From positions 248,001 through 312,000 of the IMG/VR virus record IMGVR_UViG_3300049793_000366: a DNA stretch of 64,000 nucleotides; one strand, 5' to 3'. The position numbers were made by a program, and so were the translations under genes. The notes below the pieces were generated by a model. That model had not been told where the DNA came from and searched no databases. It saw nothing but the letters and a program-made list of their open reading frames with translations. Shown here in pieces: positions 6,059 to 31,087 of the stretch; position 1 is the first letter of the stretch, and every line of letters starts with the position of its first letter.

Positions 6059-6250
6059 TTAACCTAATAAATCATCTATTTTAGAGTCACGTTTCATCAT
6101 TTTTTCAATCATTTGGTATTCCTTGATTAGTCTGGTTTCTTCCGCTGCATAGTCTATGTATTTGAAGTTTTTTAAATCTTCAATCATCTCCGGTGTCCAT
6201 ACTGCGTTGACTTTAAAGGTACCAACCATACCATTCTCATCGACACTCAT
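6059..6250 (-). CDS. Small protein: gp23-like major capsid fragment plus C-terminal R-tag
   Basis: KVNAVWTPEMIEDL...ID.AAE resembles the gp23-family KLKA.WT/S.ELAQDL...DAEAEL segment; ends KRDSKIDDLLG. Confidence 0.65.
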   Translation of the reverse strand: MSVDENGMVGTFKVNAVWTPEMIEDLKNFKYIDYAAEETRLIKEYQMIEKMMKRDSKIDDLLG

Positions 6251-7593
6251 TATTGTTGAAATCCTTTTTCTTCACCACCTAATTTATCATCTTCCATATC
6301 CTCCATACCCTCTTTTCCTGGTACGCCTTTTTTCTTCTTATCCTGTGGTGTTTGAAACTCTCTATATACATCTGGGTAAACATTATCCTCAGCATCTACA
6401 TCATATTTTATTTCGAAGAAATCCCCGAAATCAAGTAATCCTGATTTAGCAAGTGTTACTTCGGTGTGCTTTCTTAAAGATAAATCGATAATCTGTGATA
6501 TTTTATCAACGAATGCATTAAATAAACCAATTGTAGAATCGTTAAATACACCGATTGGTTTCTTTCTTTTTTTGTTGAATGAACCCAAAATAACTTTAAA
6601 TAAATATTCAATCTTAGGGTCTTCTATAAGTAAATCTTTTGTAACCTTATTCTTAATTAACTCTACGTTAATCTTGAATTTTTCCTTATCAAAGAAATCT
6701 GGAATAGAGAACTGAAATTCTAAAATATCATCCTTAGCATCTGACATATACATATTGAATAATTTTGAAATCAATGATATATAAGCGGTATCTCTTCTTG
6801 TTTCTTTTATCTTAACATCATCTACGTTTATAGATTGACAGTAATTCATAAAGTTCAATAAGATTAGAGAATATACTTCAACAAACTCAGTAGTGTTTGT
6901 ATCAGATATACGTCTGTATAATGGATTGAATATCTCGAATGATAAATCCTTGTCTTGTAATCTGATGATAATCTTCTCAGTATTTTGCTGAAAGTCATCC
7001 ATCAAGAAAGAATTCTTAGAATATGGGTTAAGTAGCTTATAGAAGAAAAACGCAAAGTTCTTTTCACCAAAAACATATTCTAAATCATCAGGAGATGTAT
7101 TTATGAAGTATTTTATAGCTTGTACTTGGTCTTGCCCTAAATTACCCTGAAATATAACTGGTAAGTGGTCTACATCAAATAAGCGAGAAAACTCAATAAG
7201 CTCATCAAGTGAGTAATCAAATTTGTTACCTTTACACATACCCGTCAACACTAAGCCATTTTTTGGCATACGCTGATATTGAATATTTGCTGGTTGATTA
7301 TCTGGGAAGTATTCGAATATGAACCACCATTTCTTTGGCATTAGTGATTTAACTCTATCATCAAATTTATTGAAATAGTCAAGAGCCGCATTATAGAAGT
7401 TCTGTAATGCTAGATCAATCTGATTAATTGGTTCTGACCCAAGAGATTTTGGTTTTATTCTGAACTGAGAGCCATCCCAGTTGACATATATTTTAGATCC
7501 TTGTACATCTTCATATACAATTATTTCATTCTCGAAAAGCTCATTTAAAAGCTGTTTATCACTATCGTGATTAAGGGTTATAAGTTTACTCAT
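6250..7593 (-). CDS. RNA-ligase (Rnl2)-like fold protein, catalytic Lys apparently absent
   Basis: YEDVQGS in place of EKxDG; FIFEYF, LPVIFQG, EKIIIR; late motif at 7622-7629. Confidence 0.45.
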   Translation of the reverse strand: MSKLITLNHDSDKQLLNELFENEIIVYEDVQGSKIYVNWDGSQFRIKPKSLGSEPINQIDLALQNFYNAALDYFNKFDDRVKSLMPKKWWFIFEYFPDNQPANIQYQRMPKNGLVLTGMCKGNKFDYSLDELIEFSRLFDVDHLPVIFQGNLGQDQVQAIKYFINTSPDDLEYVFGEKNFAFFFYKLLNPYSKNSFLMDDFQQNTEKIIIRLQDKDLSFEIFNPLYRRISDTNTTEFVEVYSLILLNFMNYCQSINVDDVKIKETRRDTAYISLISKLFNMYMSDAKDDILEFQFSIPDFFDKEKFKINVELIKNKVTKDLLIEDPKIEYLFKVILGSFNKKRKKPIGVFNDSTIGLFNAFVDKISQIIDLSLRKHTEVTLAKSGLLDFGDFFEIKYDVDAEDNVYPDVYREFQTPQDKKKKGVPGKEGMEDMEDDKLGGEEKGFQQ

Positions 7594-7621
7594 AAGTATT
7601 TACGTTTTTTATACTATATGG

Positions 7622-7665
7622 TATATATTAAATTTTGGTTTTGTTCAAACAATATTTAATATATA
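7622..7665. promoter_or_regulatory. Divergent pair of putative late promoters (AATATATA)
   Basis: AATATATA on minus at 7622-7629 and on plus at 7658-7665. Confidence 0.6.
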
Positions 7666-7669
7666 CATC

Positions 7670-8032
7670 ATGGGTAAGGAAATTAAGAAGTTTAAGGAAT
7701 ACAGTAACCTGTCATCAGACGCGGAATCTGAGACTTTTGACATGGATGGAAATAAAATTTCGGGTCCACTTGAGATAGAGTCAATAATTGACGTATTTAC
7801 TGACCCTTCTGAAATCCCAGGAGTTAGCGAATCCGCATCTGGTATTAGTTTCAATACGGATCTCTCTGTTAAAGAGGTTAAAAGAGGTGATAATATTTGG
7901 ATAACTGCTCTTTTGAGAAAACCAGGTACAACATCGTTCAATTCCCCAGCCGTACAAGGTGTTATAAAAGTTAGAGTTGTTGATATATACTACGGATTGC
8001 AATACTTAAATAAAGTAATTAATAATGGCTAA
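7670..8032 (+). CDS. Late protein with N-terminal capsid-targeting-like sequence
   Basis: Starts MGKEIKKFKEY; late motif 4 nt upstream. Confidence 0.7.
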   Translation: MGKEIKKFKEYSNLSSDAESETFDMDGNKISGPLEIESIIDVFTDPSEIPGVSESASGISFNTDLSVKEVKRGDNIWITALLRKPGTTSFNSPAVQGVIKVRVVDIYYGLQYLNKVINNG

Positions 8033-8549
8033 GAAAATACACGGTAAACAATTATTAGATAATACTATCGTGAAAACGATAAATGGTGTGACTTATTCAC
8101 ACCAAGGTATTACGTCATCTAATGACAGTAATGTTACTCTTAGTATTGTATCTGGTCAGACACATTCATTTAATCTTGGTTGGACTGGTGTATTACCAGT
8201 TAGTAGGGGTGGTTTGAGTAATTCAACATTCACTGCTTCACAGATTTTGATTATTGATTCAATGACATCATCTGTTATTAGTTCTGGTTATCTTTTTAAT
8301 GATGCTGGAACATCTGCTTTTGATGTGTGGTCAGCAAATAAGATAATTTCTTATACATCAATGATAAGTGGTTCTGGTTTATCAGCATCGTTAGCAGTTG
8401 GTAATAATGCTGGAACATATTCGATTGATATGAACCAAAATAAGATAATGAATGTAGCAACTGGTTCAAATAGATTAGACGCGACTAACTACGGTCAAAT
8501 GTATGATATGAGTGTTGAGATGTTAAAAATAATAAGCCTAAGAGTATGA
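8025..8549 (+). CDS. Virion or tail-fibre-associated protein
   Basis: Ser/Thr/Gly-rich; LPVSRGG, WSANKI and NVATG..DATNYGQ fibre motifs. Confidence 0.65.
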   Translation: MAKKIHGKQLLDNTIVKTINGVTYSHQGITSSNDSNVTLSIVSGQTHSFNLGWTGVLPVSRGGLSNSTFTASQILIIDSMTSSVISSGYLFNDAGTSAFDVWSANKIISYTSMISGSGLSASLAVGNNAGTYSIDMNQNKIMNVATGSNRLDATNYGQMYDMSVEMLKIISLRV

Positions 8550-10627
8550 TAATTTTAAATGCGACAACTAAATTATTGGAAATATCAGTCGATTCTGCAC
8601 CATCAGTAAATATTGATTGGGTATCGAATTGGATTGATATGGGTCAAGCATCTTTCGTACCGATGGCTTATAGTGGTGCTTTAGGTCCTTTGCTAACCTC
8701 TGATGTAGTAGTTCCAGCGCCAATATCCAATCATCAACATCAATTAAAATATCTATCGATATACAATTCTGATAGCACGGCTTTAACTTTTAATGTTTTC
8801 TATAATGATAATGGTACACTTAGAACTATTACTAAGATAACATTAGATTCAGGTGATACCTTAAGATATATTGATAGTGATGGATTTAGTGTTTTATTAT
8901 CAAATGGTGCTATTAAAACTGGTGTTGTTGGTCCTGCTGGTGCTACGGGTGCTGGTGCTGATTTCACAATTAATAGTTTAACATATTCAGCTCAATATTT
9001 AACATCATCTAATGATACGAATGTTAAATTAAATATAGTATCTAGTGTTGATACACATTCGTTTAATGTAACTTGGAATGGACAACTTCCTGTAAATAGA
9101 GGTGGTTCTAATAATGCTACTTTCTCTAACTTGGAATTACTTAGAATGAATTTAGCTGGGACAGCTTTTGAAAGTTCAGGATTAACATCTGGTCAGATAT
9201 CGGTAGTTGGTCATACTCATAACGCAATCGATACAATAGGATTCACATCATCTACAAGGGGTGTGTTAAGTGCTACTTTGCCTATTTTATATAGCTCATC
9301 TACTGGTATAATATCAAGTCAACAATCTACTTCAACACAGTCTGGTTATTTATCGACTACTGATTGGAACACATTTAATAACAAACAGTCATCTTTAACA
9401 TTCACTAATGGAGTGACGAATAATAGTGGAACTGTATCATTAACAACGACTGGTGCTACTGCTGGTGCGTATTCATTCGTAAATGCTACAATAGATGCAT
9501 ATGGTAGAGTAACAAATATATCAAGTAACCCTGCTTCGTCTTCAACACAGTCTGGTTATTTAACAACAACTGATTGGAACACATTTAACAACAAGCAATC
9601 AGTATTGACATTTGTGAATGGTGTGACTAATAACAGTGGAACTGTTTCATTAACAACTACTGGTGTTACACCAGGTACATATACATTTTCAACATTTGTA
9701 GTTGATACTTATGGTAGAATCTCATCAGCTTCTAATGGTTTGCAATCATCTTCAACACAATCAGGTTATTTAACAACAACTGATTGGAACACATTTAACA
9801 ACAAGCAATCAGCATTAGTATTTGTAAACGGTTTAACAAACAATGGTGGTACTGTTTCATTAACAACTACCGGAGCAACTGCTGGTTCTTATACATTCTT
9901 GAGCGCGACTATTGATGCCTATGGTAGAGTAACTGATATATTCAGCAATCCTGCTTCGTCTTCAACACAATCAGGTTATTTGACATCAACTGATTGGAAC
10001 ACATTTAACAATAAACAATCAACACTTGCTTTTCCTGATGGTGTTCAGAATGTGGGTGGTACTGTTTCGCTTACAAATACTGGTGTTACTGCTGGTACAT
10101 ATACAAATACAACTCTTACAGTAGATGCTAATGGTAGAATAACTTCTGCTTCAAATGGTTTAACGCAATCAGCATCTAATGTGATGTTCACTAATAATGA
10201 ATGGTTATCTACGGTAGTTGGTTCTGGTACAACAGCAATTGTAAACTCACTTGCTACTGATGGTAGATTATATACGAGATATACTGCGGCAAGTGGTGGT
10301 GGGCAATCTTGTACATTTATTTTTCAATCTCGTATACCAAGAGACTTTGTTGGATTCCCTTCTAATAACGTATTTATCGATTCGTATAAATCTACTGGTA
10401 CACCAACTTTCACATTTGAATTTTTGAATCCAAGTGGTGTTGTATATCAAACAACAAGTATTTTACCAGGTTCTAATACAACATGGACTAATAATAATTT
10501 TAGTTTAACTGGTACGTGGTCATCTGGTGATATAATAACATTCAGAGTTACTATATCGAGTCCATCGAATACGGCTGAACACCGAATTGATAGATTTGAA
10601 TTACAGTATAATAGTAAGATAGGGTAA
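8546..10627 (+). CDS. Tail fibre protein with 70-aa repeats
   Basis: Four copies of TQSGYLxTTDWNTFNNKQ with TGxTAGxY..T.DAYGR motifs; short collagen-like GPAGATG. Confidence 0.8.
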   Translation: MIILNATTKLLEISVDSAPSVNIDWVSNWIDMGQASFVPMAYSGALGPLLTSDVVVPAPISNHQHQLKYLSIYNSDSTALTFNVFYNDNGTLRTITKITLDSGDTLRYIDSDGFSVLLSNGAIKTGVVGPAGATGAGADFTINSLTYSAQYLTSSNDTNVKLNIVSSVDTHSFNVTWNGQLPVNRGGSNNATFSNLELLRMNLAGTAFESSGLTSGQISVVGHTHNAIDTIGFTSSTRGVLSATLPILYSSSTGIISSQQSTSTQSGYLSTTDWNTFNNKQSSLTFTNGVTNNSGTVSLTTTGATAGAYSFVNATIDAYGRVTNISSNPASSSTQSGYLTTTDWNTFNNKQSVLTFVNGVTNNSGTVSLTTTGVTPGTYTFSTFVVDTYGRISSASNGLQSSSTQSGYLTTTDWNTFNNKQSALVFVNGLTNNGGTVSLTTTGATAGSYTFLSATIDAYGRVTDIFSNPASSSTQSGYLTSTDWNTFNNKQSTLAFPDGVQNVGGTVSLTNTGVTAGTYTNTTLTVDANGRITSASNGLTQSASNVMFTNNEWLSTVVGSGTTAIVNSLATDGRLYTRYTAASGGGQSCTFIFQSRIPRDFVGFPSNNVFIDSYKSTGTPTFTFEFLNPSGVVYQTTSILPGSNTTWTNNNFSLTGTWSSGDIITFRVTISSPSNTAEHRIDRFELQYNSKIG
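9331..10150 (+). repeat. Tandem 210-bp (70-aa) coding repeat, about 4 units
   Basis: TCxGGTTATTT...TGATTGGAACACATTTAA at 9341, 9551, 9761 and 9971. Confidence 0.9.
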
Positions 10628-10648
10628 AAAATAAAAAATATATAGGAC

Positions 10649-13600
10649 ATGGCATTTTTAGGTAAGTATAAGATATATCAACCAGTTGACTTTGGAACTA
10701 CAATTGATCCAAACTATGTAATACAAACATCACTTGATAGTCAAGTATTTGATGATATTACGAGTTTGGAAAATTTTGATAATGTTATTGGTAGAATCAG
10801 TGGTACGGTTGGATATTATTCTAATATACGTAATGAGATGTCTTTGCTTATTGATAACTTTGGTGGATTCTTAGACCTTAGTACTGCTGAACAAGAAATT
10901 GTTTCAAGACATTTCTTAGTTTCTAAAGCTGATAGAGATACAATACATACAAGTGATGAACAAATAGCAAACGCAAAAAGAATACAAGCATTATTAGCAA
11001 AGGAAAATGAGGATGCTGGTTATAACTATAATGCTGTTGTATATGCTGATAGTAATTTAATAGCTGATGTTACCGATTATCAATCAATTGACTATTTATA
11101 TACACCACATTTAACTGTTGGTAGTATTTCATTTGGTGCTAGCGGCCCAACTGGTGGTTCTGATTTATATGCTACAATTTCAACTAAGGTTGATACAACT
11201 GATAATAGACTACACTACCAGAATGTTCTTAAAGTTAAGAAAAATCCTGGTGTTGGTGAATATTCAAGTATTAATGCCGCTTTAGCTGCTATTACTGATA
11301 ATAGTACAACTAATAGATATAGTATTACTGTTTATCCAGGTAAATATACTGAGAGTACAATTTATACTAAGCCTTTCGTTGAGATATCGGGTATAGCTAA
11401 CTTCAACACAATAATTGAAGTTAATGATTATACTAAAGATGTTGTTGTGTTATGTCCTAATACATCATTTAATAATTTCTTATTAACGGGAGCAACAGCA
11501 ACAGGAGCAGCTGCTTTCGCGGTAACTGCTTCTTTTGGACCTGGTGCTTCTTGTGAAATTAATAACATATCATTCCTAACAGTTAATACTATTTTTAGGT
11601 CTGCTCTTAGTGTTGGTCAATTTGCAATAGTTGGATTTTTAAATTCTAATGTTTCAACGTTTTCTAATGTTAAGAAAGGTATTGATATAAGTGGTGCTGG
11701 TTATACAATATTATCGTGGGCTAACTCTAAGAACAGCGTTGTTTCAACTATTAGTGATTTTGCTGAATTGAGAGGTTCTAATAATCGATTAATATTTACT
11801 GATTTTGGTTTGATTACACAACCTGCTTTGGGTGGTACAATGTCCAATTTCGTAAGAATATATGATGGTGCTACTATTGACTTAGTTGGTGTTTCTATTG
11901 ATGGTGCTGGGACAGCACTTAATAACGAAAATACTGGTTCTGGTGTTAACATACGTGCGAATGGATTTAATATTATTAATTCATTAACGAGTGATGTTGT
12001 AATTGGTCATCCATCTACAGTTGGTAACTTACAGGGTATTGTTGATTCATCAAAAGTTACAATAGATTCTACTAATTTTAGATTATCATATTCAGAACCA
12101 ACTGGTGGTTTCGTAATTACAGGTGATTTCACACTTGGTCAATCACAAGGTACGTTGGTTGAAATGGGTGCTATCATCGAAAGAGCATTAACTATGGGTG
12201 TTTATGAAGGTGGTGATATAGCTACTGTTTCAGCAAGTGGTTTTACCGTTTCGGTTGAAGCTGGTTTTGGTTACCTATGTGATGATGGTGAAGCAGACCA
12301 TACTATTAGAAAGATTTTCTGGGATAATGATTCAATTGCGGTATCACCATATACTAGTGAGTTCTTATATTACAACTCAAGCGGTACTTTATTAAAGTCA
12401 GCAACTAGATTAGAGTCTCAACATTATATATTCTTAGGTAGAACTGTTACTGATAGTAGTTCTATTGTTTCAATCATACCATCTAAATTATATGGTATGC
12501 ATTATAGCAATGATGTTGATACATTATTGAGAGATGGTTTTGGTTCTATTTATAAGAGTGGTTCATTGGTAAGTGAAGGAACATCTGATAGAACATTAGA
12601 TGTTACAAGTGGTGTTTATTACAATACCCAATATAAATACACACCTTCTGGTGGACTTCCAATTACATTTGATGCGTTTTATAAAAATGGTAGTGGTGGA
12701 TTTACAATAAGTCGTAATCAACAAGTATTACCTAATAGTACATATGATAATGGTTCGGGTACTTTAGTAAGTGCTACTGCTGGATATTATATGAAGTTCG
12801 CACTATACGTAGTTGGTGATGGTGCCAATGAAAAATATTTCATAGTACACCCACAAGAACAACATCTTACCCAGTTAGCAGCGGAACAAGGTAGTATTCC
12901 AATTGCTCCTTCATATTTTGATGCAAGTATTACATTGATAGCGAGTATCGTTGTTCAACAAGGTAATAGTAGCATAGTTAGTATATTTGATAATAGACCA
13001 ACATTATCATTTAAGGCAGAAAGTGTAACAGCATTATCTACACATGGTAACTTAGCTGGTCTATTAGAAGATGACCATCCTCAATATTTATTAGGTAATG
13101 GTACAAGAGCAATGAGTGGTAACTTAAACTTAGGTAACAATAATATTACCAATGTTGCTAATATAAATGGTATTAGTATTGCTACACACTCAAGTAGACA
13201 TTTACCAAATGGTGCTGACCCTCTTACAACTGGTACACCATCTACGGTTGGTACATCAAATCAAGAAGGTATTGGTAATGCTTTCTCAAGACAAGACCAC
13301 GTACACGCACATGGTTTTCAGACAAATGAATTACATCATGCCTTATCAACAACAGTATCACATGGTTTCATGTCATCTGTTGATAAGTATAAACTGGACT
13401 ATATACCAGGCAGTAGTGCAAGCTATTTCTCAGAACCTTTATATGTTAATGGTTTAACGGTTTCTGTTTTTCAAGCTACATCAACTCAATCTGGATATCT
13501 ATCTACGACTGACTGGAATACATTTAATAATAAGCAATCAACATTAACATTTACGAATGGTTTAACAACATCGTCTGGTACTATATCGTTAACGACTACT

Positions 13601-16231
13601 GGTGTGTCATCTGGTAGCTATACATTCTCTAATGTGACTGTTGACCAATATGGTAGACTTACTTCTGTTTCTAATGGTAGTCAAGCTACATCAACTCAGT
13701 CTGGATATTTATCTACGACTGACTGGAATACATTTAATAATAAATTAGGTACATCACTTACTTCATCTTATATACTTGTTGGTAACGGTTCTAATGTTGC
13801 TGTTGGTGCTACTGTAAGTGGTGATGCTACATTATCAAACACTGGTGTATTGACATTAAATAGTTCTGTTGTGAATGATAGTAAAATAGCATCACATACA
13901 TCTACTAAGATTACAATTACTAATAAGAGTCAATTAAATACAAGTGTTGTATATTCTGACCAAGGAAATACATTTAGTGTTGCTAAACAATCTTTCCAAT
14001 CAGATGGTACTTATGCTCCAATTAAACTTGGTGGTTTAGCATCTGACCCATCTTCATTAGAGGCTGGTGACTTTTGGTATAACTCAGCAGATCCTTCACT
14101 TAAGTTTAGAACTGGTAGTAATACTACACGCATTGTTGTTGATACCAGATTATCACAAACATTGTATAATAAGACTCTTGAATCACCAATGATTGCTACT
14201 ATTAGTAATGGTGGTGGTAGTATATCTGTACCATCTATATCAGTAATTGATACAATGGTTCTTAGAAATACTGCGGAGACATTGACAAATAAAACGTTAA
14301 CTGGTCCAACTATATCTTATATTTATAATACCGGAACAGTAACATTACCGACATCGACTGATACATTAGTTGGTAGAAATACAACAGATACATTGACAAA
14401 CAAAACGTTAACTGGTCCGACTATATCTACTATTTATAATACCGGAACATTGACACTTCCTACCACAACAGATACGTTAGTTGGTAGAGCTACTAGTGAT
14501 GTATTAACAAATAAGACAATTAGTGCTTCTGGTAATACAATCAGTGATGCTTCAATAGCAACTGGTGATTTATTGAAATCAAACGGTTCTAAATTCGTTA
14601 GATTTGGAATGGGTTCACCTTTACAAGTATTACGTGTTAATGCTGGTGGTACTGATTTAGAATATGCTAATCCATCTGCTGGTTCCGGAACTGTTACGAG
14701 TGTTGGTATGACAACATCGGGTGTCTTATACAACGTTAATACAACAATAACAACAAGTGGTACTTTCTCACTGACCTTATTAACACAAAATGCTAATTTA
14801 ATATTTGCTGGTCCATCTACTGGTGGTGCTACTACTCCATCATTTAGGTCATTGGTTACGGCTGATATGCCATCAACTGTTGTATTAAATAATCAATCAA
14901 ATACAATAACAAACACTGCTAATACATCAGTATTATCATTGGTTAGTAGTAACGCTTCATTCACGGGTGACGCATTAACTGTAAATGTTAGTGGTAACTC
15001 TGTATCACCATATAACCTATTTAAATTAACATCTACTTTATCTGGAACAAGTACTGATAAGTTAGTTGTTAGTAAAGAGGGTATGTTGAGAGTTCATGTT
15101 GGTACTGCTTCAATGATAACGGCACCAACATATTCTATTGCTCACTTTGTATCAAACATTGGTGCGAGCGCGAGCGTAATTGTCACTGATACGTATGGTA
15201 CTATTGGTGCTGGATATATGGGTCGTAGAGCAAGAGGTACATCTGATGCTCCAACAGCAGTTCAAACAAATGACATATTGACATCATTTATTGGTAGAGG
15301 TTATGGTGCTACTAATATGAATACATCAGATGGTTATATTAGGATTGTGGCAAGTCAGAACTTTACCGACACAGCACATGGTACTTATATTTCCTTCTAC
15401 ACAACTGGTACATCCAGTATTGTTGCTTCTGAGAAAATGAGAATAGGAGATGATGGTACTATCACATTAACAACTGCTCTACCTATTACGTCTGGTGGTA
15501 CTGGTCAGATAACACCGAATGATGCATTAAATGCTTTATTCCTATCTGCTACTGCCTCTGGTACAGATACATACACAGTTACATTAACTGGTATTACATC
15601 CATAACAACTGGTACAATTATTAGAATTGGCTTTACAAATGCCAATACAAGTACTGCTACACTTAATGTTAACTCATTGGGTGCAATAGCCATTGTAAAA
15701 GAAGGTGGTATAGCATTGAGAGCATCTGACATTGGTCCTGGTTCAATACATCACTTGATGTACGATGGTGTAAGCTGGACTATTGTGGCATCAAGTATGA
15801 CTCTGAAGTCTATTGTATTCTTCTCACCATCACAGGTTACTTCTGGTACAGCATTCACGCTTACTTTAGTTTCTAATGATAGAGTTGTTAGAACTTTATC
15901 TGGGTCTAACGTAACCAACACATCATATACTGAGATTGCTTTACCAGCAGATTTCATATCGTTTCCAACAGGAGCTTATAGAGTTGATTCGAATAGGTCT
16001 GGTAACGGTACTCTTACGGTTACTATTGGTAAAGGTGGAGTAGCAGATGCTACGATGAATGCATTAAGCTTAGTTGCTACTGCTACCAACTCAACTTGGG
16101 AGACCAAAAGTGGTACACCAACTAGTTCATATACTGCTGGTGATAGATTGTTAATTACTATGACTACAACAACTTCTGGTAACACAACAACGGCTGTTGG
16201 TAACGTAATACTTCAATATTATGGTAGATAA
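10649..16231 (+). CDS. Large tail fibre / tail spike protein (1860 aa)
   Basis: YSSINAALAAI..I.VYPGKY.E beta-helix cap, DDHPQY, RQDHVH, TLTNKTL repeats, two 70-aa repeats; AATATATA at 10637-10644. Confidence 0.8.
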   Translation: MAFLGKYKIYQPVDFGTTIDPNYVIQTSLDSQVFDDITSLENFDNVIGRISGTVGYYSNIRNEMSLLIDNFGGFLDLSTAEQEIVSRHFLVSKADRDTIHTSDEQIANAKRIQALLAKENEDAGYNYNAVVYADSNLIADVTDYQSIDYLYTPHLTVGSISFGASGPTGGSDLYATISTKVDTTDNRLHYQNVLKVKKNPGVGEYSSINAALAAITDNSTTNRYSITVYPGKYTESTIYTKPFVEISGIANFNTIIEVNDYTKDVVVLCPNTSFNNFLLTGATATGAAAFAVTASFGPGASCEINNISFLTVNTIFRSALSVGQFAIVGFLNSNVSTFSNVKKGIDISGAGYTILSWANSKNSVVSTISDFAELRGSNNRLIFTDFGLITQPALGGTMSNFVRIYDGATIDLVGVSIDGAGTALNNENTGSGVNIRANGFNIINSLTSDVVIGHPSTVGNLQGIVDSSKVTIDSTNFRLSYSEPTGGFVITGDFTLGQSQGTLVEMGAIIERALTMGVYEGGDIATVSASGFTVSVEAGFGYLCDDGEADHTIRKIFWDNDSIAVSPYTSEFLYYNSSGTLLKSATRLESQHYIFLGRTVTDSSSIVSIIPSKLYGMHYSNDVDTLLRDGFGSIYKSGSLVSEGTSDRTLDVTSGVYYNTQYKYTPSGGLPITFDAFYKNGSGGFTISRNQQVLPNSTYDNGSGTLVSATAGYYMKFALYVVGDGANEKYFIVHPQEQHLTQLAAEQGSIPIAPSYFDASITLIASIVVQQGNSSIVSIFDNRPTLSFKAESVTALSTHGNLAGLLEDDHPQYLLGNGTRAMSGNLNLGNNNITNVANINGISIATHSSRHLPNGADPLTTGTPSTVGTSNQEGIGNAFSRQDHVHAHGFQTNELHHALSTTVSHGFMSSVDKYKLDYIPGSSASYFSEPLYVNGLTVSVFQATSTQSGYLSTTDWNTFNNKQSTLTFTNGLTTSSGTISLTTTGVSSGSYTFSNVTVDQYGRLTSVSNGSQATSTQSGYLSTTDWNTFNNKLGTSLTSSYILVGNGSNVAVGATVSGDATLSNTGVLTLNSSVVNDSKIASHTSTKITITNKSQLNTSVVYSDQGNTFSVAKQSFQSDGTYAPIKLGGLASDPSSLEAGDFWYNSADPSLKFRTGSNTTRIVVDTRLSQTLYNKTLESPMIATISNGGGSISVPSISVIDTMVLRNTAETLTNKTLTGPTISYIYNTGTVTLPTSTDTLVGRNTTDTLTNKTLTGPTISTIYNTGTLTLPTTTDTLVGRATSDVLTNKTISASGNTISDASIATGDLLKSNGSKFVRFGMGSPLQVLRVNAGGTDLEYANPSAGSGTVTSVGMTTSGVLYNVNTTITTSGTFSLTLLTQNANLIFAGPSTGGATTPSFRSLVTADMPSTVVLNNQSNTITNTANTSVLSLVSSNASFTGDALTVNVSGNSVSPYNLFKLTSTLSGTSTDKLVVSKEGMLRVHVGTASMITAPTYSIAHFVSNIGASASVIVTDTYGTIGAGYMGRRARGTSDAPTAVQTNDILTSFIGRGYGATNMNTSDGYIRIVASQNFTDTAHGTYISFYTTGTSSIVASEKMRIGDDGTITLTTALPITSGGTGQITPNDALNALFLSATASGTDTYTVTLTGITSITTGTIIRIGFTNANTSTATLNVNSLGAIAIVKEGGIALRASDIGPGSIHHLMYDGVSWTIVASSMTLKSIVFFSPSQVTSGTAFTLTLVSNDRVVRTLSGSNVTNTSYTEIALPADFISFPTGAYRVDSNRSGNGTLTVTIGKGGVADATMNALSLVATATNSTWETKSGTPTSSYTAGDRLLITMTTTTSGNTTTAVGNVILQYYGR
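13471..13745 (+). repeat. Two further copies of the 210-bp repeat unit
   Basis: TCAAGCTACATCAACTCA..CTGGATAT at 13471 and 13681. Confidence 0.85.
14270..14520 (+). repeat. 111-bp (37-aa) TLTNKTLTGPTI coding repeat
   Basis: ATTGACAAAyAAAACGTTAACTGGTCC at 14281 and 14392, plus a degenerate third copy. Confidence 0.8.
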
Positions 16232-23116: not shown

Positions 23117-23314
23117 TTATTCTTCTTTTAATAATTCGTCTATTTTAGTTTCTCTGTTTGACATTTTAATTCTGCTTATCAATTCATCAGATGTACTATT
23201 TAGATATTCTGTATATGAGATGCTTTTATCCAACTCTTTTGCTATATACTCAGAATAGTCAATTTGTGCATTTAATGCTTCCATAACATATTCTTGGTAG
23301 CTAATTGTGTTCAT
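23117..23314 (-). CDS. Small protein with 14-aa YxEY repeats and C-terminal R-tag (NRETKIDELL)
   Basis: ISYQEYV / IDYSEYI / ISYTEYL. Confidence 0.7.
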   Translation of the reverse strand: MNTISYQEYVMEALNAQIDYSEYIAKELDKSISYTEYLNSTSDELISRIKMSNRETKIDELLKEE

Positions 23315-23516
23315 CTATGACAATTTTTATTTTTTCATCTCGTTTTCTACTACCGAAAGTAGATACTATTTCATTTAACTCAGATAAATCATCTGGTATT
23401 GAACCAGCGTTATACCAATTGCCATCCAAAAACACACATATTATACTTTCATCTGCGTTAAAAAAACAATCTCCATGTTGTGGGTTCTTAATAGGACCTG
23501 ATAACCAATTTAGCAC
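23301..23516 (-). CDS. Small protein with fibre-like P..GD.FFN...W motif and C-terminal R-tag (KRDEKIKIVI)
   Basis: ORF after a middle promoter. Confidence 0.65.
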   Translation of the reverse strand: MLNWLSGPIKNPQHGDCFFNADESIICVFLDGNWYNAGSIPDDLSELNEIVSTFGSRKRDEKIKIVIDEHN

Positions 23517-23521
23517 TTTGG

Positions 23522-23548
23522 TTATAGTAAATTCATCTATGTTTGTTT
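23522..23548 (-). promoter_or_regulatory. Putative middle promoter AAAC-N16-ACTATAA
   Basis: Recurring motif. Confidence 0.55.
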
Positions 23549-23552
23549 AAAT

Positions 23553-26841: not shown

Positions 26842-26855
26842 GTTTCTCTCTTGTA

Positions 26856-28301
26856 TTATAGTCCACCGAATATATCCATAATCACGGTCAATCTTGATGT
26901 TATCTCAGGCATACCTAATGGATCAATAATTGAATTGATAGGTGATAAGATACATTTAAAAAATTGTGTGTCGTAATCAATTTCTGGAGCATACTCTACT
27001 GGATGCGATCCTCTTATGTATGCGAATACGTTATTGTCACCCTTACAATAGTAATATTTAATCTTAGTACCAGATTTGATAAATGTGTATTTATCTTGAT
27101 ACTTTTGATTCTTATATAGTAAGTGATTATATAACGCCGCTGCTTTTACTGCAAAGTGCGCTCCACTCACGAATTCTAGTTTCTCTTTATCATCAAGAAC
27201 TTTCTCGTTGTAGTTAGAACATGATGACTGCATTGCTATCTCATCGATATCTGCTAATTCAAATTCTTTACGTAAGCCTTTTACTAACTTTAATAATTCT
27301 TTGATGTTGAATGATTCTGGATTTGTAAATAAATATTTTACAATATCTACAATCTTCTCCCTTGCGAAAGCTGGTGTTGATGAACGTACAAGCTCTACAC
27401 CTTTTGGATATAAGTACTTGAAACGTTCGTGTGGAATACCATCCTCCCAAGATACGTGTTGTATGTATTTCTTCTTAGCGATGTTTATAATAGACTCTGA
27501 TACACGCTCTAACTCGAAATCTTCCTTATTGTCTACACCGAATGAACCAGCGTATTCTTCTAATGAATCTCTAAAGAATTGTGCTATTCTGAATTTATCA
27601 ACAGCGTGTACAAAATCTAACTCTCTGAAAAAGTTAGGGATAATCTTAGTAGTAACATCTTTTAAATCCTTACTACCAACAAAGTAGCCATCAATAACTA
27701 ATGTTTCTATATTATTATCAGCTATAACATTTTTAATGTTTTTTAAGCCACCTATACCAAAGTTATCATACTCTGCTATGTAACCAATGAAACTTGGATT
27801 ATCAATTTCAATATCAATTTCATTTCTAAGTAATATTGCAAATGGTTTATCGATAGTTGATAAGAACTCATCATTGATTACTTGATTTTTCCAATCACAT
27901 CTTTTTATAGCTGGACCAAATCCAACAAACACTGAGTCGGTATCAGCGTAGATACTAACTTCTAAATCGCCTGGTTTTTCTGGGTCTATTGGTGTTAATG
28001 GTTTTACATTTTTAATATAAAGCATATTATGTAAATCAGTATCAAGATGCCATTGATTCCACCAATAATCTTGAGTTTTCTTAGACATGGTTTTAGTTAA
28101 ATCACGTCCTTGTGCTGTTATCGTACCAGCTACTTGGTTATTGAATAATATGAAGTGTTGATTAGCGAAGGCTCCATATGAACCATTTAGTACGAGTTTA
28201 AGAGCTAATTGCAAGGCATTATAATAATCCACTTCTTTTTTAAGTGTATTAGCCTTGTTTTTAAGTTCTTCTATTTTATTTATCTTTTCCGTCCTTGTCA
28301 T
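26856..28301 (-). CDS. Family B DNA polymerase, C-terminal subunit (split gp43B-like)
   Basis: KLVLNGSYG (motif B), YADTDS (motif C), AKKKY, KGVE..RSSTP; no exonuclease or motif A. Confidence 0.9.
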   Translation of the reverse strand: MTRTEKINKIEELKNKANTLKKEVDYYNALQLALKLVLNGSYGAFANQHFILFNNQVAGTITAQGRDLTKTMSKKTQDYWWNQWHLDTDLHNMLYIKNVKPLTPIDPEKPGDLEVSIYADTDSVFVGFGPAIKRCDWKNQVINDEFLSTIDKPFAILLRNEIDIEIDNPSFIGYIAEYDNFGIGGLKNIKNVIADNNIETLVIDGYFVGSKDLKDVTTKIIPNFFRELDFVHAVDKFRIAQFFRDSLEEYAGSFGVDNKEDFELERVSESIINIAKKKYIQHVSWEDGIPHERFKYLYPKGVELVRSSTPAFAREKIVDIVKYLFTNPESFNIKELLKLVKGLRKEFELADIDEIAMQSSCSNYNEKVLDDKEKLEFVSGAHFAVKAAALYNHLLYKNQKYQDKYTFIKSGTKIKYYYCKGDNNVFAYIRGSHPVEYAPEIDYDTQFFKCILSPINSIIDPLGMPEITSRLTVIMDIFGGL

Positions 28302-28309
28302 ACAATTAA

Positions 28310-28335
28310 TTATACTCAGAAGAGTGTGATTGTTT
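28310..28335 (-). promoter_or_regulatory. Putative middle promoter AAAC-N15-AGTATAA
   Basis: Recurring motif directly upstream of the polymerase subunit. Confidence 0.6.
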
Positions 28336-28341
28336 AATTTT

Positions 28342-29292
28342 TTATGATACTAATTTTTCCAAATTATTTATCCGCTTCCATTCTTTAGTTCCCATAAATA
28401 TTAGCTCATATTCTTGTAGAAAAGCTGCATAACTACCCATAACTTTTATGGCATCTTCTGCCCATTTGGAATCTCTGTTTGGTACTAAGTGATATGGAAT
28501 CCATTGTTTGACGTATATGTTTTTATCATCATAAACAAGGTCTTTGAAATGATTCTCACCATTAGGAGTACCGAGTATTGTTATCTTAGTGTTTTTTCGC
28601 GCTATTGCTGTTAGTTGATATACTTGACTGAATCTTCTTACAGCAGTAGGTGATAAGTGACCATAACCATCTACAATAGTAAAATCATAAGTCATACCCA
28701 AAGTTGAACCAGCACTGCCGTAGAATGTTCCTATTTTAATACATGAGCCATTATCGAATACTATTCTACTATTTGACATACTGAGTATACCAAGTTTAGC
28801 ATAGTAAGGTAAATTCTCATATAGAATTTTAATTTTTTCTAAAATTCTTTTAGCACCATCTATTTTATTATCCGTTATAAGTATTTTCTTATCATCCTGA
28901 TATGCATAGTGTAAAGCTTGTAATGCCAATATCAATGTCATTCCACTTTGTCTGGAATTGATTATAGTGTTAAACCTATTTGATTTGTAATTTTGTAAGG
29001 CTTGTGCTTGATATGGACGAAGTGAGACTGATGCGTAGCCTAAGTTACCAGTTAATGTTTTTGTAAGAGATAATAAATACTCAGGATCATCTTGTATTTT
29101 AAGTTTAGATGCTATTTCTTCTTCTGTGTAGTCGAATATAATACCAGATGCGCGATGTGCCTCATTTCTCCTATAATATGGTTGTGTGCGTGGGTATTCT
29201 GGTTCAATACCTAATAAACCTCCTAATTTCTTATCTCGGTTCTTTTGTTTCTCACTTCTACATTCTAATAATTCTGTTGACCAATTACTCAT
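28342..29292 (-). CDS. Degenerate terminase large-subunit ATPase domain (gp17-like) with R-tags at both ends
   Basis: LRPYQ, SRQSGMT (K>M), IVDGY (DE>DG), GTPNGENHF, FLQEYEL; no nuclease domain. Confidence 0.8.
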   Translation of the reverse strand: MSNWSTELLECRSEKQKNRDKKLGGLLGIEPEYPRTQPYYRRNEAHRASGIIFDYTEEEIASKLKIQDDPEYLLSLTKTLTGNLGYASVSLRPYQAQALQNYKSNRFNTIINSRQSGMTLILALQALHYAYQDDKKILITDNKIDGAKRILEKIKILYENLPYYAKLGILSMSNSRIVFDNGSCIKIGTFYGSAGSTLGMTYDFTIVDGYGHLSPTAVRRFSQVYQLTAIARKNTKITILGTPNGENHFKDLVYDDKNIYVKQWIPYHLVPNRDSKWAEDAIKVMGSYAAFLQEYELIFMGTKEWKRINNLEKLVS

Positions 29293-29854
29293 TTATAAAA
29301 TCGCGTACTATTTTCTCTGCTTCAAGCAGTGCAATATCTAAATCACGATTTAGTATTTGATAGTCGAACTTATCTGCTGTTTTTAGTTCAGTTTCCGCTT
29401 TATCTAAGCGTCTTTCTATACTCTCAGGTGTTTCGGTTCGTCTTAACTTCAATCGTTCTTCTAAGTCTTTAATAGAGGGTGGTAATACTATTATTGATAT
29501 GGCTTTATCACCAAATTGCTTTTTAAGATTTAAAGCACCAATAACATCCATATCAAATATCACATCTTTACCATTTTCCCATATTCTATTCACTTCTGAC
29601 TTTAATGTACCATAGAAATTATTGGTATATACCTCTTCCCATTCAACAAATTCTTCTTTTTCAATTTTATTTTTGAACTCATCAATTGATAGAAAATGGT
29701 AGTCTTTACCATCGATTTCGCCCCTTCTTATTGGGCGACTCGTTGCTGATATAGAAAATGATATTTCATTACTTAAAATACTCAGCAAATGCTTTACTAT
29801 CGTGGTTTTACCAGCTCCAGATGGTGCCGCAAATATTATTAATTTACCCTTCAT
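29285..29854 (-). CDS. gmk: Guanylate kinase
   Basis: APSGAGKTT, SATSRPIR.GE.DG.DYHF, YGT, DMDVIGA. Confidence 0.95.
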   Translation of the reverse strand: MKGKLIIFAAPSGAGKTTIVKHLLSILSNEISFSISATSRPIRRGEIDGKDYHFLSIDEFKNKIEKEEFVEWEEVYTNNFYGTLKSEVNRIWENGKDVIFDMDVIGALNLKKQFGDKAISIIVLPPSIKDLEERLKLRRTETPESIERRLDKAETELKTADKFDYQILNRDLDIALLEAEKIVRDFINE

Positions 29855-29874
29855 AGACTTAATTACTTTAGAAC

Positions 29875-29909
29875 TTATATTCATAAAGAGATGATTGTTT
29901 CAATATATA
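29875..29909. promoter_or_regulatory. Back-to-back middle (minus, AAAC-N15-AATATAA) and late (plus, AATATATA) promoters
   Basis: Motifs at 29875-29900 and 29902-29909. Confidence 0.6.
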
Positions 29910-29913
29910 CTAC

Positions 29914-30390
29914 ATGATTAATTTTTTAAAAATGTTGAAGTTGATTCTCAGGTCTAAAATAAATCATTTCATATCTATTGATTCTGCTACTTACTTTAAG
30001 TGGCGTTATTTGATACAGATATTAATAAGACTAAATAAGAACTACGTAGCGTGTGAGGTATTCAGAACGCGATACAAGGGACTAAGGAATATTGTGATTA
30101 TTGGTTTAAAGTGGAATGGTAAGAATGTAAAGAGAAGAACAAATGGGTACGCAAAGCAGTGGATATTAAGACATAAGAAGTATAACTGCCCTTATTGTGA
30201 ACAAAAGCTAACACCAGTTAATGCTACTAGTGACCATATTGTACCAATATCAGTTGGTGGTAATAATTGTCAAGTAAATATAATAGTTTGTTGTAAAGAT
30301 TGTAATGGTGAGAGAGGTGATAGAGAATTCTATTCCTACTTAAGATATAAGAATAAAAAATATGCGAATATTAAATTCCCATTTTTATAA
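29914..30390 (+). CDS. HNH endonuclease
   Basis: CPYC...DHIVP.S.GG.N...N...CKDCN. Confidence 0.9.
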   Translation: MINFLKMLKLILRSKINHFISIDSATYFKWRYLIQILIRLNKNYVACEVFRTRYKGLRNIVIIGLKWNGKNVKRRTNGYAKQWILRHKKYNCPYCEQKLTPVNATSDHIVPISVGGNNCQVNIIVCCKDCNGERGDREFYSYLRYKNKKYANIKFPFL

Positions 30391-31087
30391 GTGCTAACTC
30401 TCTTGATACGCTTTTCATCTCATTATATTGCTCTTCGTTTACGATGACACTAAGCTCTTTCAATTTACCAACTTCGTGTAGATTGTAACCACCTCTTATT
30501 TCAACCTTGTCATCCGTTACTGATGCGTCAACAACTGATAATTCAAGTATTGATGATTTTTTACCGAATAAAATTCGAGTATCGAAATAATTTATATATG
30601 GGTCAACATAGAGTGGTATATTATTCCATCTACCGACTACATCTATTATACCAGCACTACCATTTCTAATTCTTGCATCTGGTGTGTAATACATTGAATC
30701 TTGTAGATATGAACCAATTTGTGCATTTGTTATAATAAAATCAGCTTCTCTGGTTTCATACGCTAACCTTATATCTAAATCTCTAAGTATATCTTTATAT
30801 TCAAATGATATAACGCCATTTATATGACTAAATACAAATCCTGCTTTTTCAGCACTGTCATAAATTGTTTGACATAGTTTCCTTTGAATTTGTGTGATGT
30901 ATTGTTCTATTATAGCAGTAGTAAATCGTCCTTCACCAACTGAATCGAATGCTGGGTCGTTTCTATTTATAGCTATGCTAATACCAATCTCTTCTGATAG
31001 TGTATTTACTTTTGGTGTAGACCAATTAAATATTTCTATTATCTTTAACTTGTTTATTAAATTTGCTGTTATATTTTCTTTTAGCAT
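30371..31087 (-). CDS. Truncated gp23-like major capsid paralog with degenerate R-tag (start uncertain)
   Basis: ADFIITNAQIGSYL...VGRWNNIPLYVDPY...ILFGKK resembles the gp23 C-terminal half; ends SRELALIKMGI. Confidence 0.6.
   Translation of the reverse strand: MLKENITANLINKLKIIEIFNWSTPKVNTLSEEIGISIAINRNDPAFDSVGEGRFTTAIIEQYITQIQRKLCQTIYDSAEKAGFVFSHINGVISFEYKDILRDLDIRLAYETREADFIITNAQIGSYLQDSMYYTPDARIRNGSAGIIDVVGRWNNIPLYVDPYINYFDTRILFGKKSSILELSVVDASVTDDKVEIRGGYNLHEVGKLKELSVIVNEEQYNEMKSVSRELALIKMGI

What the first reader, a model, noticed from the sequence alone, without database searches (positions are those of the whole stretch)
6059..31087. Broken pieces of morphogenesis proteins fused to the tag: possible decoy library
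SEEN: up to five tagged ORFs resemble non-functional fragments of assembly proteins. They are a gp23-like segment (6059), a gp23-like C-terminal half (30371), a terminase ATPase with mutated Walker motifs (28342), a YxEY repeat (23117) and a fibre-like motif (23301). They sit outside structural operons and four lie behind middle promoters. KNOWN: bacterial defences sense these protein classes (Avs sensors detect terminase or portal; CapRel and Lit respond to capsid protein). INFERENCE: these baits are made before the real late proteins and could bind immune sensors and carry them to the tag receptor. Alternatively they act as dominant-negative poisons of competing phages, or as assembly timers.
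Basis: partly seen in the sequence, partly recalled or inferred. Interest (0 to 1): 0.85.

Follow-up and report, generated by a model that had tools for sequence, protein, structure and literature searches.

The report
Tagged, disabled capsid and terminase copies
A 712-kb phage keeps conserved, disabled copies of its own capsid protein and DNA-packaging ATPase among its replication genes, each carrying a short docking peptide that a quarter of the neighbouring genes also carry; what they do is unknown, and nothing shows they are immune decoys.

Summary
The window comes from a 711,805-bp Mahaphage-clade phage that uses the standard genetic code. Three of the five ORFs really derive from head-assembly proteins. 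ORF 6059-6250 is a 63-aa piece of the gp23 capsid protein (strand plus start of the spine helix). ORF 30371-31087 is a 238-aa stripped-down but complete HK97/gp23 core, not a broken half. ORF 28342-29292 is a T4-type terminase ATPase domain with no nuclease domain, no Walker A lysine and no Walker B glutamate.

All three are intact and conserved in relatives. They are under purifying selection but evolve faster than the replication enzymes. Full-length capsid and terminase genes coexist with them in the clade. The YxEY and "fibre-like" ORFs have no detectable relation to assembly proteins.

The tag is real: 21 of 83 ORFs carry it, against 0.3 expected. It sits on otherwise unrelated proteins, is absent around capsid genes, and resembles the clamp-binding tails of T4 gp43, gp55 and gp33. 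Two of the derivatives lie in a conserved block: primase, mini-gp23, HNH, pseudo-terminase, DNA polymerase.

My best reading is that these are tethered, non-enzymatic adaptors or regulators linking replication to head assembly (confidence 0.3). The decoy idea is neither supported nor excluded.

The parts
6059..6250 (-). micro-gp23: a 63-aa ORF made of a gp23 capsid-protein segment (strand plus first half of the spine helix, equal to residues about 309-359 of the LR756502 capsid protein), followed by a canonical C-terminal tag (6062-6094)
   Evidence: Translation. Orthologues sit at the same position after the 447-aa gene in L016, L018 and LR756502. Pfam Gp23 E 2.1e-9 and 4.6e-5 for two orthologues. 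hhalign of 4 orthologues against capsid proteins: E 2.2e-5, probability 76%.
6250..7593 (-). 447-aa gene of unknown function. Its stop overlaps the micro-gp23 start, and it is the conserved upstream partner in all relatives.
   Evidence: No Pfam or PHROG family.
23301..23516 (-). It is a real conserved gene of unknown function. Tag at 23304-23345.
   Evidence: Orthologue with GTG start and tag in L001 15660-15869. dN 0.27, dS about 1.1. No family hit. Weak Mtd_N lead only.
23117..23314 (-). 65-aa tagged ORF with three [IS]-x-Y-x-E-Y-[VIL] repeats. It is lineage-specific. Tag at 23120-23158.
   Evidence: Absent from the syntenic place in L001. No reliable relative.
28342..29292 (-). pseudo-terminase: a 316-aa T4-type TerL ATPase domain only. 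Degenerate Walker A at 28936-28956 (SRQSGMT). Degenerate Walker B at 28666-28683 (FTIVDG). N-terminal tag at 29206-29241. C-terminal tag at 28345-28377.
   Evidence: Family alignments. AF2 model. Foldseek best match T4 gp17 ATPase 2o0j, E 8e-18.
29285..29884 (-). Guanylate kinase. Its stop overlaps the pseudo-terminase start, so they share an operon. A TATATA-type motif lies at 29903.
   Evidence: Pfam Guanylate_kin 2e-43..
29914..30390 (+). HNH endonuclease on the opposite strand between mini-gp23 and pseudo-terminase. It is conserved at this place in four relatives and is the most conserved of the ten genes compared with L001 (89% aa identity to L001).
30371..31087 (-). mini-gp23: a 238-aa compact HK97/gp23-type core (N-terminal helices, spine helix, A- and P-domain strands) ending in a C-terminal helix with a tag variant. 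It overlaps the 3' end of the primase gene.
   Evidence: AF2 pLDDT 86.5. Foldseek results. hhalign against gp23 capsid proteins E 1.2e-28.
31026..32234 (-). DNA primase-like gene, the first gene of the conserved block
   Evidence: phrog_47 at 1e-15. Synteny.
26856..28301 (-). C-terminal half of a family B (gp43-like) DNA polymerase, the last member of the block. Its tail (VIMDIFGGL) fits the tag pattern and aligns with the T4 gp43 clamp-binding tail.

Best explanation
SHOWN. Three ORFs are intact, conserved, fast-evolving paralogues of the phage's own head-assembly proteins that have lost what makes those proteins work.
- A 63-aa gp23 spine-helix segment.
- A 238-aa bare HK97 core without the parts of gp23 that precede the strand before the spine helix.
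- A terminase ATPase domain without its catalytic residues or its nuclease domain.
They are encoded in non-structural operons. Two of them belong to a conserved block: primase, mini-gp23, HNH, (kinase), pseudo-terminase, polymerase. Each carries the clade-wide terminal peptide [LIK]-R-[DNE]-x-K-[IL]-[NDE]-x-[LIV]-[LFI]. In the pseudo-terminase model this peptide is a short helix on a poorly predicted, probably flexible tether at each end.

INFERRED. The peptide is a T4-type sliding-clamp-binding epitope (compare gp43 SLDFLFG, gp55 SLDFLYEAND, gp33 TLDFLL). The disabled paralogues would then be held on DNA-loaded clamps at the replisome. There they would act as non-enzymatic adaptors or brakes that bind their active counterparts (terminase, capsid subunits or their partners). 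This would couple, or delay, packaging and head assembly relative to replication. It would extend the gp17-gp55-gp45 coupling known in T4.
For: Homology and loss of function.

Conservation and selection.

Active full-length copies in the clade. A true capsid gene lies on the same contigs as micro-gp23. LR756502 holds in one genome a true capsid gene, a true 712-aa terminase with intact GKT and DE motifs, and a micro-gp23.

Conserved replication-block synteny in the window, L001, L182 and L184.

Tag statistics:
- 21 of 83 ORFs against 0.3 expected.
- 46 distinct tags across sequences with GC from 25% to 44%.
- Tagged proteins are unrelated once the tag is removed.
- 0 of 291 ORFs next to capsid genes carry it.
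- In LR756502, 1 of 61 ORFs carries it in the 180-229 kb block against 10 of 65 in the 229-278 kb block.

The tags are modelled as helices on low-confidence tethers.

T4 clamp-binding tails were read from the T4 genome. They are described as interchangeable hydrophobic-acidic epitopes on flexible linkers that still work when internal (PMC2988020). This window's polymerase tail fits the tag pattern.

A gp44-like clamp loader exists in the clade.

The T4 terminase-gp55-clamp link is described in PMC9026906.
Against: - No clamp gene was identified in the window or the fetched loci.
- No binding could be tested.
- The tag has a conserved Arg and Lys upstream that the T4 tails lack, and aliphatic rather than aromatic last residues.
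- A quarter of the ORFs in this window being clamp clients would be unprecedented.
- No known role links a capsid-fold protein to the replisome.
- In L182 the polymerase continues 22 residues past the motif, so its tail register is uncertain.
- The mini-gp23 tag is a variant.
- The window genome's own full-length capsid and terminase genes were not fetched.
Confidence: 0.3

Rival explanations
1. Immune decoys or sponges. The early-made, disabled look-alikes bind host sensors of terminase or capsid protein (Avs, Upx, CapRel, Lit type) without triggering them. The tag takes the complex to a common receptor or protease.
For: They are true look-alikes of sensed protein classes. They are encoded outside the late operons. 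They evolve 2.5-4 times faster than neighbouring enzymes, as arms-race genes do. Loss of the Walker A lysine would remove the bound ATP that EcAvs2 contacts, which could uncouple binding from activation.
Against: There is no evidence of sensor binding. Avs proteins fire on target binding, and the T4 terminase-ATPase paralogue vs.8 is toxic with EcAvs2. The fixed position inside a replication block in four relatives is not typical of anti-defence islands. The tag is shared with about 20 unrelated proteins and resembles a clamp-binding tail.
Confidence: 0.15
2. Dominant-negative assembly poisons or timers. The truncated capsid pieces and the dead ATPase co-assemble with capsid subunits or the pentameric packaging motor. 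The targets are either co-infecting relatives or satellites (exclusion), or the phage's own proteins until late.
For: Dead subunits of ring ATPases and capsid fragments are classic poisons (established knowledge). The proteins are conserved yet fast-evolving. Their sequence is far from the clade's very conserved true capsid and terminase proteins (31% against at least 73% identity within the clade).
Against: At 31% identity to the clade's own terminase, co-assembly is uncertain. This reading does not explain the tag or the replication-block synteny. There is no evidence for competitors.
Confidence: 0.2
3. The tag addresses another hub: a degron or adaptor site for a phage or host protease, a compartment or scaffold, or another abundant partner. 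The three paralogues have been re-used for functions unrelated to their origin.
For: The tag sits on many unrelated small proteins. A ClpP gene sits inside the block in L182. M16 and M28 peptidases are encoded nearby. C-terminal peptides are also how HK97-fold shells and encapsulins recruit cargo (established knowledge), and mini-gp23 is encapsulin-sized.
Against: Zero to five variable residues follow the tag, which argues against recognition of the free C-terminus. The tag is absent from proteins encoded next to the capsid gene. The encapsulin cargo-peptide consensus is not present. The similarity to T4 tails is more specific.
Confidence: 0.2
4. Non-functional relics of an old duplicated or foreign head module (capsid, HNH, terminase) decaying inside the replication region.
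For: The order capsid-like, HNH, terminase-like recalls a packaging module. Catalytic residues are lost.
Against: The ORFs are intact and of constant length in six to eight lineages down to 43% identity. dN is well below a saturated dS. Both tags and many core residues are conserved.
Confidence: 0.03

Closest known systems
T4 vs.8 (standalone terminase-ATPase-like protein of T4-like phages)
   Same: A separate gene encoding only a TerL-type ATPase domain, outside the head operon, function unknown (bioRxiv 10.64898/2026.04.30.721860; sequence read).
   Different: vs.8 keeps Walker A (GKS) and Walker B (DE), is 219 aa and has no tag. The family here is 306-318 aa, has lost both motifs and carries a tag at each end. 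Direct profile comparison is weak (probability 2.5%), so common origin is not shown.
T4 gp24 and other capsid-protein paralogues (vertex proteins)
   Same: A second gp23-derived HK97-fold gene in the same genome.
   Different: From my own knowledge, not checked here: gp24 is full-length, late, encoded in the head operon and built into the capsid. Mini-gp23 (238 aa) and micro-gp23 (63 aa) lack the N-terminal half of gp23, lie in replication or early operons and carry a docking tag.
Clamp-binding C-terminal epitopes of T4 gp43, gp55 and gp33 (PIP-like motifs)
   Same: A hydrophobic-acidic core of the form hydrophobic, D/N/E, any residue, hydrophobic, hydrophobic. It lies at or within a few residues of the C-terminus, on a linker, and is portable between unrelated proteins.
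   Different: Here there is an extra conserved Arg and Lys, and Leu/Ile instead of Phe/Tyr. The motif is found on about 25% of ORFs in this region rather than on three proteins. Clamp binding is untested.
Encapsulin shells with C-terminal cargo-loading peptides
   Same: An HK97-fold protein of about 240-300 aa, plus many proteins sharing a short C-terminal peptide. Encapsulins are among the structural matches.
   Different: Sequence homology is to gp23, not to encapsulins. The peptide does not match the encapsulin cargo consensus. Mini-gp23 itself carries a tag-like end. Shell formation is unknown.
Phage anti-defence decoys and sponges
   Same: Small early proteins that could intercept host immunity.
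   Different: My searches found no case of a phage-encoded disabled copy of its own capsid or terminase protein acting as a decoy. No binding evidence exists here.

Membership tests
Gp23-type major capsid protein (Pfam PF07068, HK97 fold) | Significant profile homology to gp23 capsid proteins | tested here: met
   Mini-gp23 family against 9 true capsid proteins: probability 99.8%, E 1.2e-28. Micro-gp23 orthologues: Pfam Gp23 E 2.1e-9 and 4.6e-5, and 4-sequence profile E 2.2e-5. The window's micro copy alone is weak.
Gp23-type major capsid protein (Pfam PF07068, HK97 fold) | Full-length architecture (about 420-620 aa, including the N-terminal half of gp23 that precedes the strand before the spine helix) | tested here: not met
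   238 aa and 63 aa. Homology covers only capsid-protein columns 303-512 and 291-341 of 562. True capsid proteins of the clade are 550-616 aa.
Gp23-type major capsid protein (Pfam PF07068, HK97 fold) | Encoded in the head-morphogenesis gene cluster | tested here: not met
   The neighbours are primase, HNH, guanylate kinase and polymerase. The true capsid gene lies about 30 kb away on a relative's contig and about 10 kb away in LR756502.
Large terminase subunit, T4 type (Terminase_6N plus nuclease) | TerL ATPase fold and sequence | tested here: met
   Pfam 3e-5, phrog_5989 6e-24. Foldseek best match T4 gp17 ATPase 2o0j, E 8e-18, TM 0.69.
Large terminase subunit, T4 type (Terminase_6N plus nuclease) | Walker A lysine (G-K-T/S) and Walker B Asp-Glu | tested here: not met
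   Walker A reads GMT, GMS, GIT, GST, GSS, GAN or GLT. Walker B reads DG, DD, DN, ES, DR or DN in the eight members, and only P0006 keeps DE. The true TerL of LR756502 has GKT and DE.
Large terminase subunit, T4 type (Terminase_6N plus nuclease) | C-terminal RNase H-like nuclease domain | tested here: not met
   The protein ends right after the ATPase domain with the tag. The alignment to the 550-aa true TerL shows the whole nuclease part missing.
T4 vs.8-like standalone terminase-ATPase paralogues | Specific sequence relationship to vs.8 and intact Walker motifs | tested here: inconclusive
   hhalign aligns the Walker regions but with probability 2.5%, E 0.018. vs.8 keeps GKS and DE, and this family does not.
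T4-type sliding-clamp-binding epitope | Short hydrophobic-acidic motif at or near the C-terminus on a flexible linker, portable between proteins | tested here: met
   The tag core [IL]-[NDE]-x-[LIV]-[LFI] plus 0-3 residues (one of 46 has 5), compared with SLDFLFG, SLDFLYEAND and TLDFLL. The tethers have low confidence in the model. Tagged proteins are unrelated.
T4-type sliding-clamp-binding epitope | Binds the gp45-type (or host) sliding clamp | not testable with these tools
   No complex prediction or assay was available. The clamp gene was not identified. Only a gp44-like clamp loader was found in LR756502.
Immune decoy or sponge | Binds a host sensor of terminase or capsid protein and prevents its activation | not testable with these tools
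   No host is known and no sensor was available. The literature shows that a terminase-ATPase paralogue can activate EcAvs2.
Encapsulin system | Encapsulin-family shell protein plus cargo with the family's targeting peptide | tested here: not met
   The fold match is generic HK97. Sequence kinship is to gp23. The tag does not resemble encapsulin cargo peptides (from my own knowledge of their consensus).

The most novel reading that the evidence does not exclude
A whole clade of the largest known phages uses one short terminal peptide as an address label on a large share of its early proteome. It has deliberately kept labelled, disabled mimics of its own capsid protein and packaging ATPase.
Probability: 0.15. 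Interest if true: 0.9.

Novelty: new variant of a known kind. Interest (0 to 1): 0.62.

Why it matters
Capsid proteins and terminases are the phage proteins that bacterial immune sensors most often detect, and they are the core of virion assembly. Finding that megaphages keep conserved genes for a 63-aa capsid fragment, a minimal capsid fold and a dead terminase ATPase gives concrete, small, expressible proteins to work with. All three are placed among replication genes and all carry a portable docking peptide.

These proteins allow direct tests of three questions:
- how packaging and assembly are coupled to replication in very large genomes;
- whether phages use self-mimics against immunity or against competitors;
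- what the clade-wide tag binds.

If the tag is a clamp-binding motif, it would be by far the largest viral set of clamp clients known.

Tried and rejected
1. Stop-codon recoding as the cause of 'broken' genes. Re-reading TGA, TAG or TAA merges no neighbouring genes into longer ones; the extra long ORFs mostly overlap genes already called (most with TAA, the commonest stop). Coding is dense under the standard code.

2. The tag as a DNA-level repeat or promoter. Codons for the conserved residues vary synonymously, and Ile/Leu/Val interchange needs first-base changes.

3. The tag as the conserved end of one paralogous family. There is no similarity between the 21 tagged proteins once the tag is cut off.

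4. The tag as a capsid or scaffold targeting signal. None of 291 ORFs flanking true capsid genes carries it. This is not fully excluded without virion proteomics.

5. The terminase fragment as half of a split active terminase. The catalytic lysine is lost in all eight members, and the clade has a conserved full-length TerL.

6. Mini-gp23 as a truncated pseudogene. It models confidently as a whole HK97 core and belongs to a family of 150-315-aa proteins.

7. Pfam on 19 other tagged ORFs and PHROGs on 10 of them, to see whether these too are fragments of structural proteins. No hits at all.

8. Fetching this genome's own capsid and terminase genes. The hit lists (120 proteins, 80 loci) were saturated by closer relatives of the queries. 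One alignment was too diverse to search with.

9. Looking for a gp45 clamp in the window and next to the LR756502 clamp loader. None was recognised.

10. Literature searches for the tag, for megaphage terminase paralogues and for capsid or terminase decoys. Nothing was found beyond T4 vs.8.

Full report
WHAT THE WINDOW IS. The window has 32% GC and is densely coding under the standard code. Re-reading any stop codon as sense does not join neighbouring genes into longer ones. It has no near-identical match among deposited phages. Its proteins place it on a 711,805-bp JGI metagenome contig (3300049793, Ga0497410_0000003). A 709,085-bp relative exists in GenBank (JAWVHH010000009.1). Its capsid-type relatives are the 634-735 kb genomes of the Mahaphage clade, which are predicted to infect Bacteroidetes. 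The region holds T4-like replication and recombination genes: a primase, the C-terminal half of a family B polymerase, a gp46-like SbcC, and a UvsW-like helicase. It also holds nucleotide kinases, methylases, peptidases and many unknowns.

THE TAG.
- A C-terminal peptide fitting R-x3-[LIV]-x2-[LIVM]-[LIVFM] plus 0-5 residues ends 21 of 83 ORFs. The pattern's internal frequency predicts 0.3.
- Codons for the conserved residues differ between copies, so selection acts on the peptide.
- From 46 distinct copies the consensus is [LIK]-R-[DNE]-x-K-[IL]-[NDE]-x-[LIV]-[LFI], followed by 0-3 residues.
- It recurs in relatives whose GC ranges from 25% to 44% and in LR756502. It is kept in orthologues.
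- The tagged proteins share no similarity once the tag is cut off. Nineteen of them have no Pfam family, and ten of those no PHROG family either.
- None of 291 ORFs flanking true capsid genes in 80 related loci carries the tag. In LR756502 it marks 1 of 61 ORFs in the 180-229 kb block, which holds the terminase and tail-like genes, against 10 of 65 in the 229-278 kb block.

ORF 28342-29292, the pseudo-terminase.
- It matches T4-type large terminases only over their ATPase domain: Pfam Terminase_6N, phrog_5989, and about 31% identity to cyanophage gp17.
- Its AlphaFold model (pLDDT 72.5, core 80-95) best matches the T4 gp17 ATPase domain (2o0j, E 8e-18, TM 0.69).
- Eight family members are known, 306-318 aa long and 43-65% identical. 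All lack the Walker A lysine, all but one lack the Walker B glutamate, and all lack the nuclease domain.
- All keep one tag near the N-terminus and one at the C-terminus. In the model both tags are short helices on low-confidence tethers.

ORF 30371-31087, mini-gp23.
- The real start is Met15, giving 238 aa.
- It belongs to a family of 150-315-aa proteins. The family profile matches nine true gp23 capsid proteins at probability 99.8%, E 1.2e-28. The match covers the part from the strand before the spine helix almost to the end.
- The model is confident (pLDDT 86.5, pTM 0.82). It aligns along nearly its whole length with small complete HK97-fold capsid proteins, encapsulins and gp23-type capsid proteins.
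- At the sequence level it is the 'C-terminal half' of gp23. Together with its own N-terminal helices it forms a compact whole core.
- It ends in a helix with a tag variant. Other family members end in canonical tags.

ORF 6059-6250, micro-gp23.
- On its own it gives only a weak match to capsid proteins.
- An ORF of 53-67 aa with the same W-T-x-E/V-x3-D motif and a C-terminal tag directly follows the orthologue of the 447-aa gene in IMG/VR relatives and in LR756502.
- Two of these orthologues hit Pfam Gp23 (E 2.1e-9, above the curated cut-off, and E 4.6e-5).
- The four-sequence profile matches the capsid proteins at residues about 309-359, with E 2.2e-5 and probability 76%.
- It is a conserved gene made of a capsid-protein segment plus the tag.

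ORFs 23301-23516 and 23117-23314.
- The 71-aa ORF is a real gene. Its GTG start, body and tag are all conserved in the 709-kb relative, and it is under purifying selection. No profile links it to a fibre protein. There is only a sub-threshold language-model neighbour with Mtd_N.
- The 65-aa ORF has three clear Y-x-E-Y repeats and a canonical tag. It is absent from the relative and has no meaningful relative.
- These two are tagged small proteins of unknown origin, like about twenty others in the window.

NOT RELICS AND NOT THE ONLY COPIES.
- Between the window and the 709-kb relative, synonymous sites are saturated (dS about 1.1-3).
- dN is 0.34 for the pseudo-terminase, 0.50 for mini-gp23 and 0.27 for the 71-aa ORF. 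For polymerase, primase, SbcC, kinases and HNH it is 0.08-0.16.
- So selection is purifying, but amino-acid change is 2.5-4 times faster than in the neighbouring enzymes.
- A true full-length capsid gene lies on the same IMG/VR contigs as micro-gp23.
- LR756502 carries in one genome a true capsid gene, a 712-aa terminase with intact GKT and DE motifs and a nuclease half, a gp44-like clamp loader, and a micro-gp23.
- True capsid and terminase proteins are at least 67% and at least 73% identical across hundreds of clade members.
- I could not fetch the window genome's own copies, because the hit lists were saturated.

CONTEXT.
- Mini-gp23 overlaps the end of the primase gene. The pseudo-terminase overlaps the end of the guanylate kinase gene. 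Micro-gp23 overlaps the end of the 447-aa gene.
- The block primase, mini-gp23, HNH (opposite strand), pseudo-terminase, polymerase C-half recurs in the 709-kb relative and in a more distant contig (L182). A short soil contig (L184) shows it as far as a cut pseudo-terminase.
- An ATATATA/TATATAT motif is about fifteen-fold enriched in intergenic DNA: 19 of 29 sites fall in 4.4% of the sequence. It heads the operons containing ORFs 6059, 23301 with 23117, and 28342. Its timing class is unknown, so 'middle promoters' cannot be confirmed.

WHAT THE TAG RESEMBLES.
- Read from the T4 genome, gp43 ends SLDFLFG, gp55 ends SLDFLYEAND and gp33 ends TLDFLL.
[quoted passage not shown] They sit on unstructured linkers and still work when placed internally (PMC2988020).
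- The tag core (for example KIDDLLG, KIDELLKEE, KLNELL) has the same pattern and the same position.
- The window's polymerase tail (VIMDIFGGL) fits the tag pattern and lies at the same distance from a PL-x-GM motif as the T4 tail does.
- T4 terminase is physically linked to the clamp through gp55 (PMC9026906).

MECHANISM.
- Shown: there are conserved disabled paralogues of capsid protein and terminase, with portable terminal peptides, inside replication or early operons.
- Inferred: the peptide docks on the sliding clamp (or another hub), and the paralogues act by binding rather than by catalysis. They would tie head assembly and packaging to replication, or hold it back. I give this 0.3.
- The decoy reading (0.15) has no direct support. 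It faces the problem that Avs-type sensors fire when they bind their target, and T4 vs.8, a terminase-ATPase paralogue, is toxic with EcAvs2. The loss of the ATP-binding lysine could however fit a non-activating binder.
- The other live rivals are a dominant-negative poison or timer (0.2) and a different hub such as a protease or shell (0.2). Neutral relics are practically excluded.

COMPARISON AND NOVELTY. The nearest known things are T4 vs.8, gp24-type capsid paralogues, T4 clamp-binding tails and encapsulin cargo peptides. None combines truncation or inactivation, a shared docking tag and a fixed place among replication genes. My literature searches found no description of the tag or of these families. 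I rate this a new variant of known kinds (inactive paralogues and docking motifs), with a real chance of being something more unusual.

LIMITS.
- No binding, expression timing or host is known.
- dN/dS values are rough because dS is saturated.
- The match between the tag and clamp-binding tails is a resemblance, not a test.
- The RB69 polymerase tail, which I compared only in my notes, is from memory and was not checked.

Noticed in passing
window 26856-28301 (-): Only the C-terminal half (fingers, palm, thumb) of the family B DNA polymerase is encoded here. The N-terminal exonuclease half is not adjacent in the window or in relatives, so the polymerase gene appears to be split, as I recall for some T4-like phages (not checked here). 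In L001 and L182 a 40-41-aa ORF precedes it; in the window that piece looks fused to the polymerase.
   Followed up: partly
window 29914-30390 (+): The HNH endonuclease between mini-gp23 and pseudo-terminase is the most conserved of the ten genes compared (89% aa identity to the 709-kb relative, dN 0.08). It keeps its place and opposite orientation in four relatives. This is unusual for a homing endonuclease and recalls terminase-associated HNH proteins.
   Followed up: partly
window, intergenic sites 836, 884, 7622, 7659, 10638, 17515, 21087, 23970, 24566, 24580, 29903, 38439, 41573, 43115, 49641, 57547, 61541, 62824, 63686: The motif ATATATA/TATATAT is strongly concentrated in the 4.4% of intergenic DNA (19 of 29 sites), typically 10-30 nt before start codons and often in divergent gene pairs. 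It is a likely phage promoter element, reminiscent of the T4 late TATAAATA.
   Followed up: partly
window 35885-37159 (+): An adenylosuccinate synthetase (Pfam E 4e-169). Its best PHROG is annotated as the PurZ-type enzyme of 2-aminoadenine genomes. I did not test whether it is PurA or PurZ.
   Followed up: no
window 10649-16231 (+) and 51131-57526 (-): Two giant ORFs (1860 and 2131 aa) with no Pfam or PHROG family at all. The 693-aa ORF just upstream of the first (8546-10627) has a weak tail-fibre PHROG hit.
   Followed up: no
L182 7260-7943: In a more distant relative a ClpP protease gene is inserted in the conserved block between the polymerase half and the AAA_28 gene. This is relevant to the idea that the tag could be a degron.
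   Followed up: no
window 23317-23550 (+): A 77-aa ORF lies antisense to the conserved 71-aa tagged gene. It is probably spurious. My crude gene call picked it in place of the real GTG-start gene, so the tag count of 21 of 83 is slightly low.
   Followed up: yes
window 59376-59891 (+) and 3-830 (-): Tag-like motifs also occur away from the C-terminus: 24 residues before the stop in the 171-aa ORF, and internally in the UvsW-like helicase fragment. Together with the N-terminal copy in the pseudo-terminase, this shows the motif is not strictly terminal.
   Followed up: no
window 39304-40047 (-), 41579-42316 (-), 44623-45363 (+), 49652-50374 (+), 37214-38374 (+), 21876-22619 (+): Accessory genes in the same region: two DNA methyltransferases (N6/N4 and Dam-like), an R2K ATP-grasp enzyme, a DnaJ-type chaperone, and M16 and M28 peptidases.
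   Followed up: no
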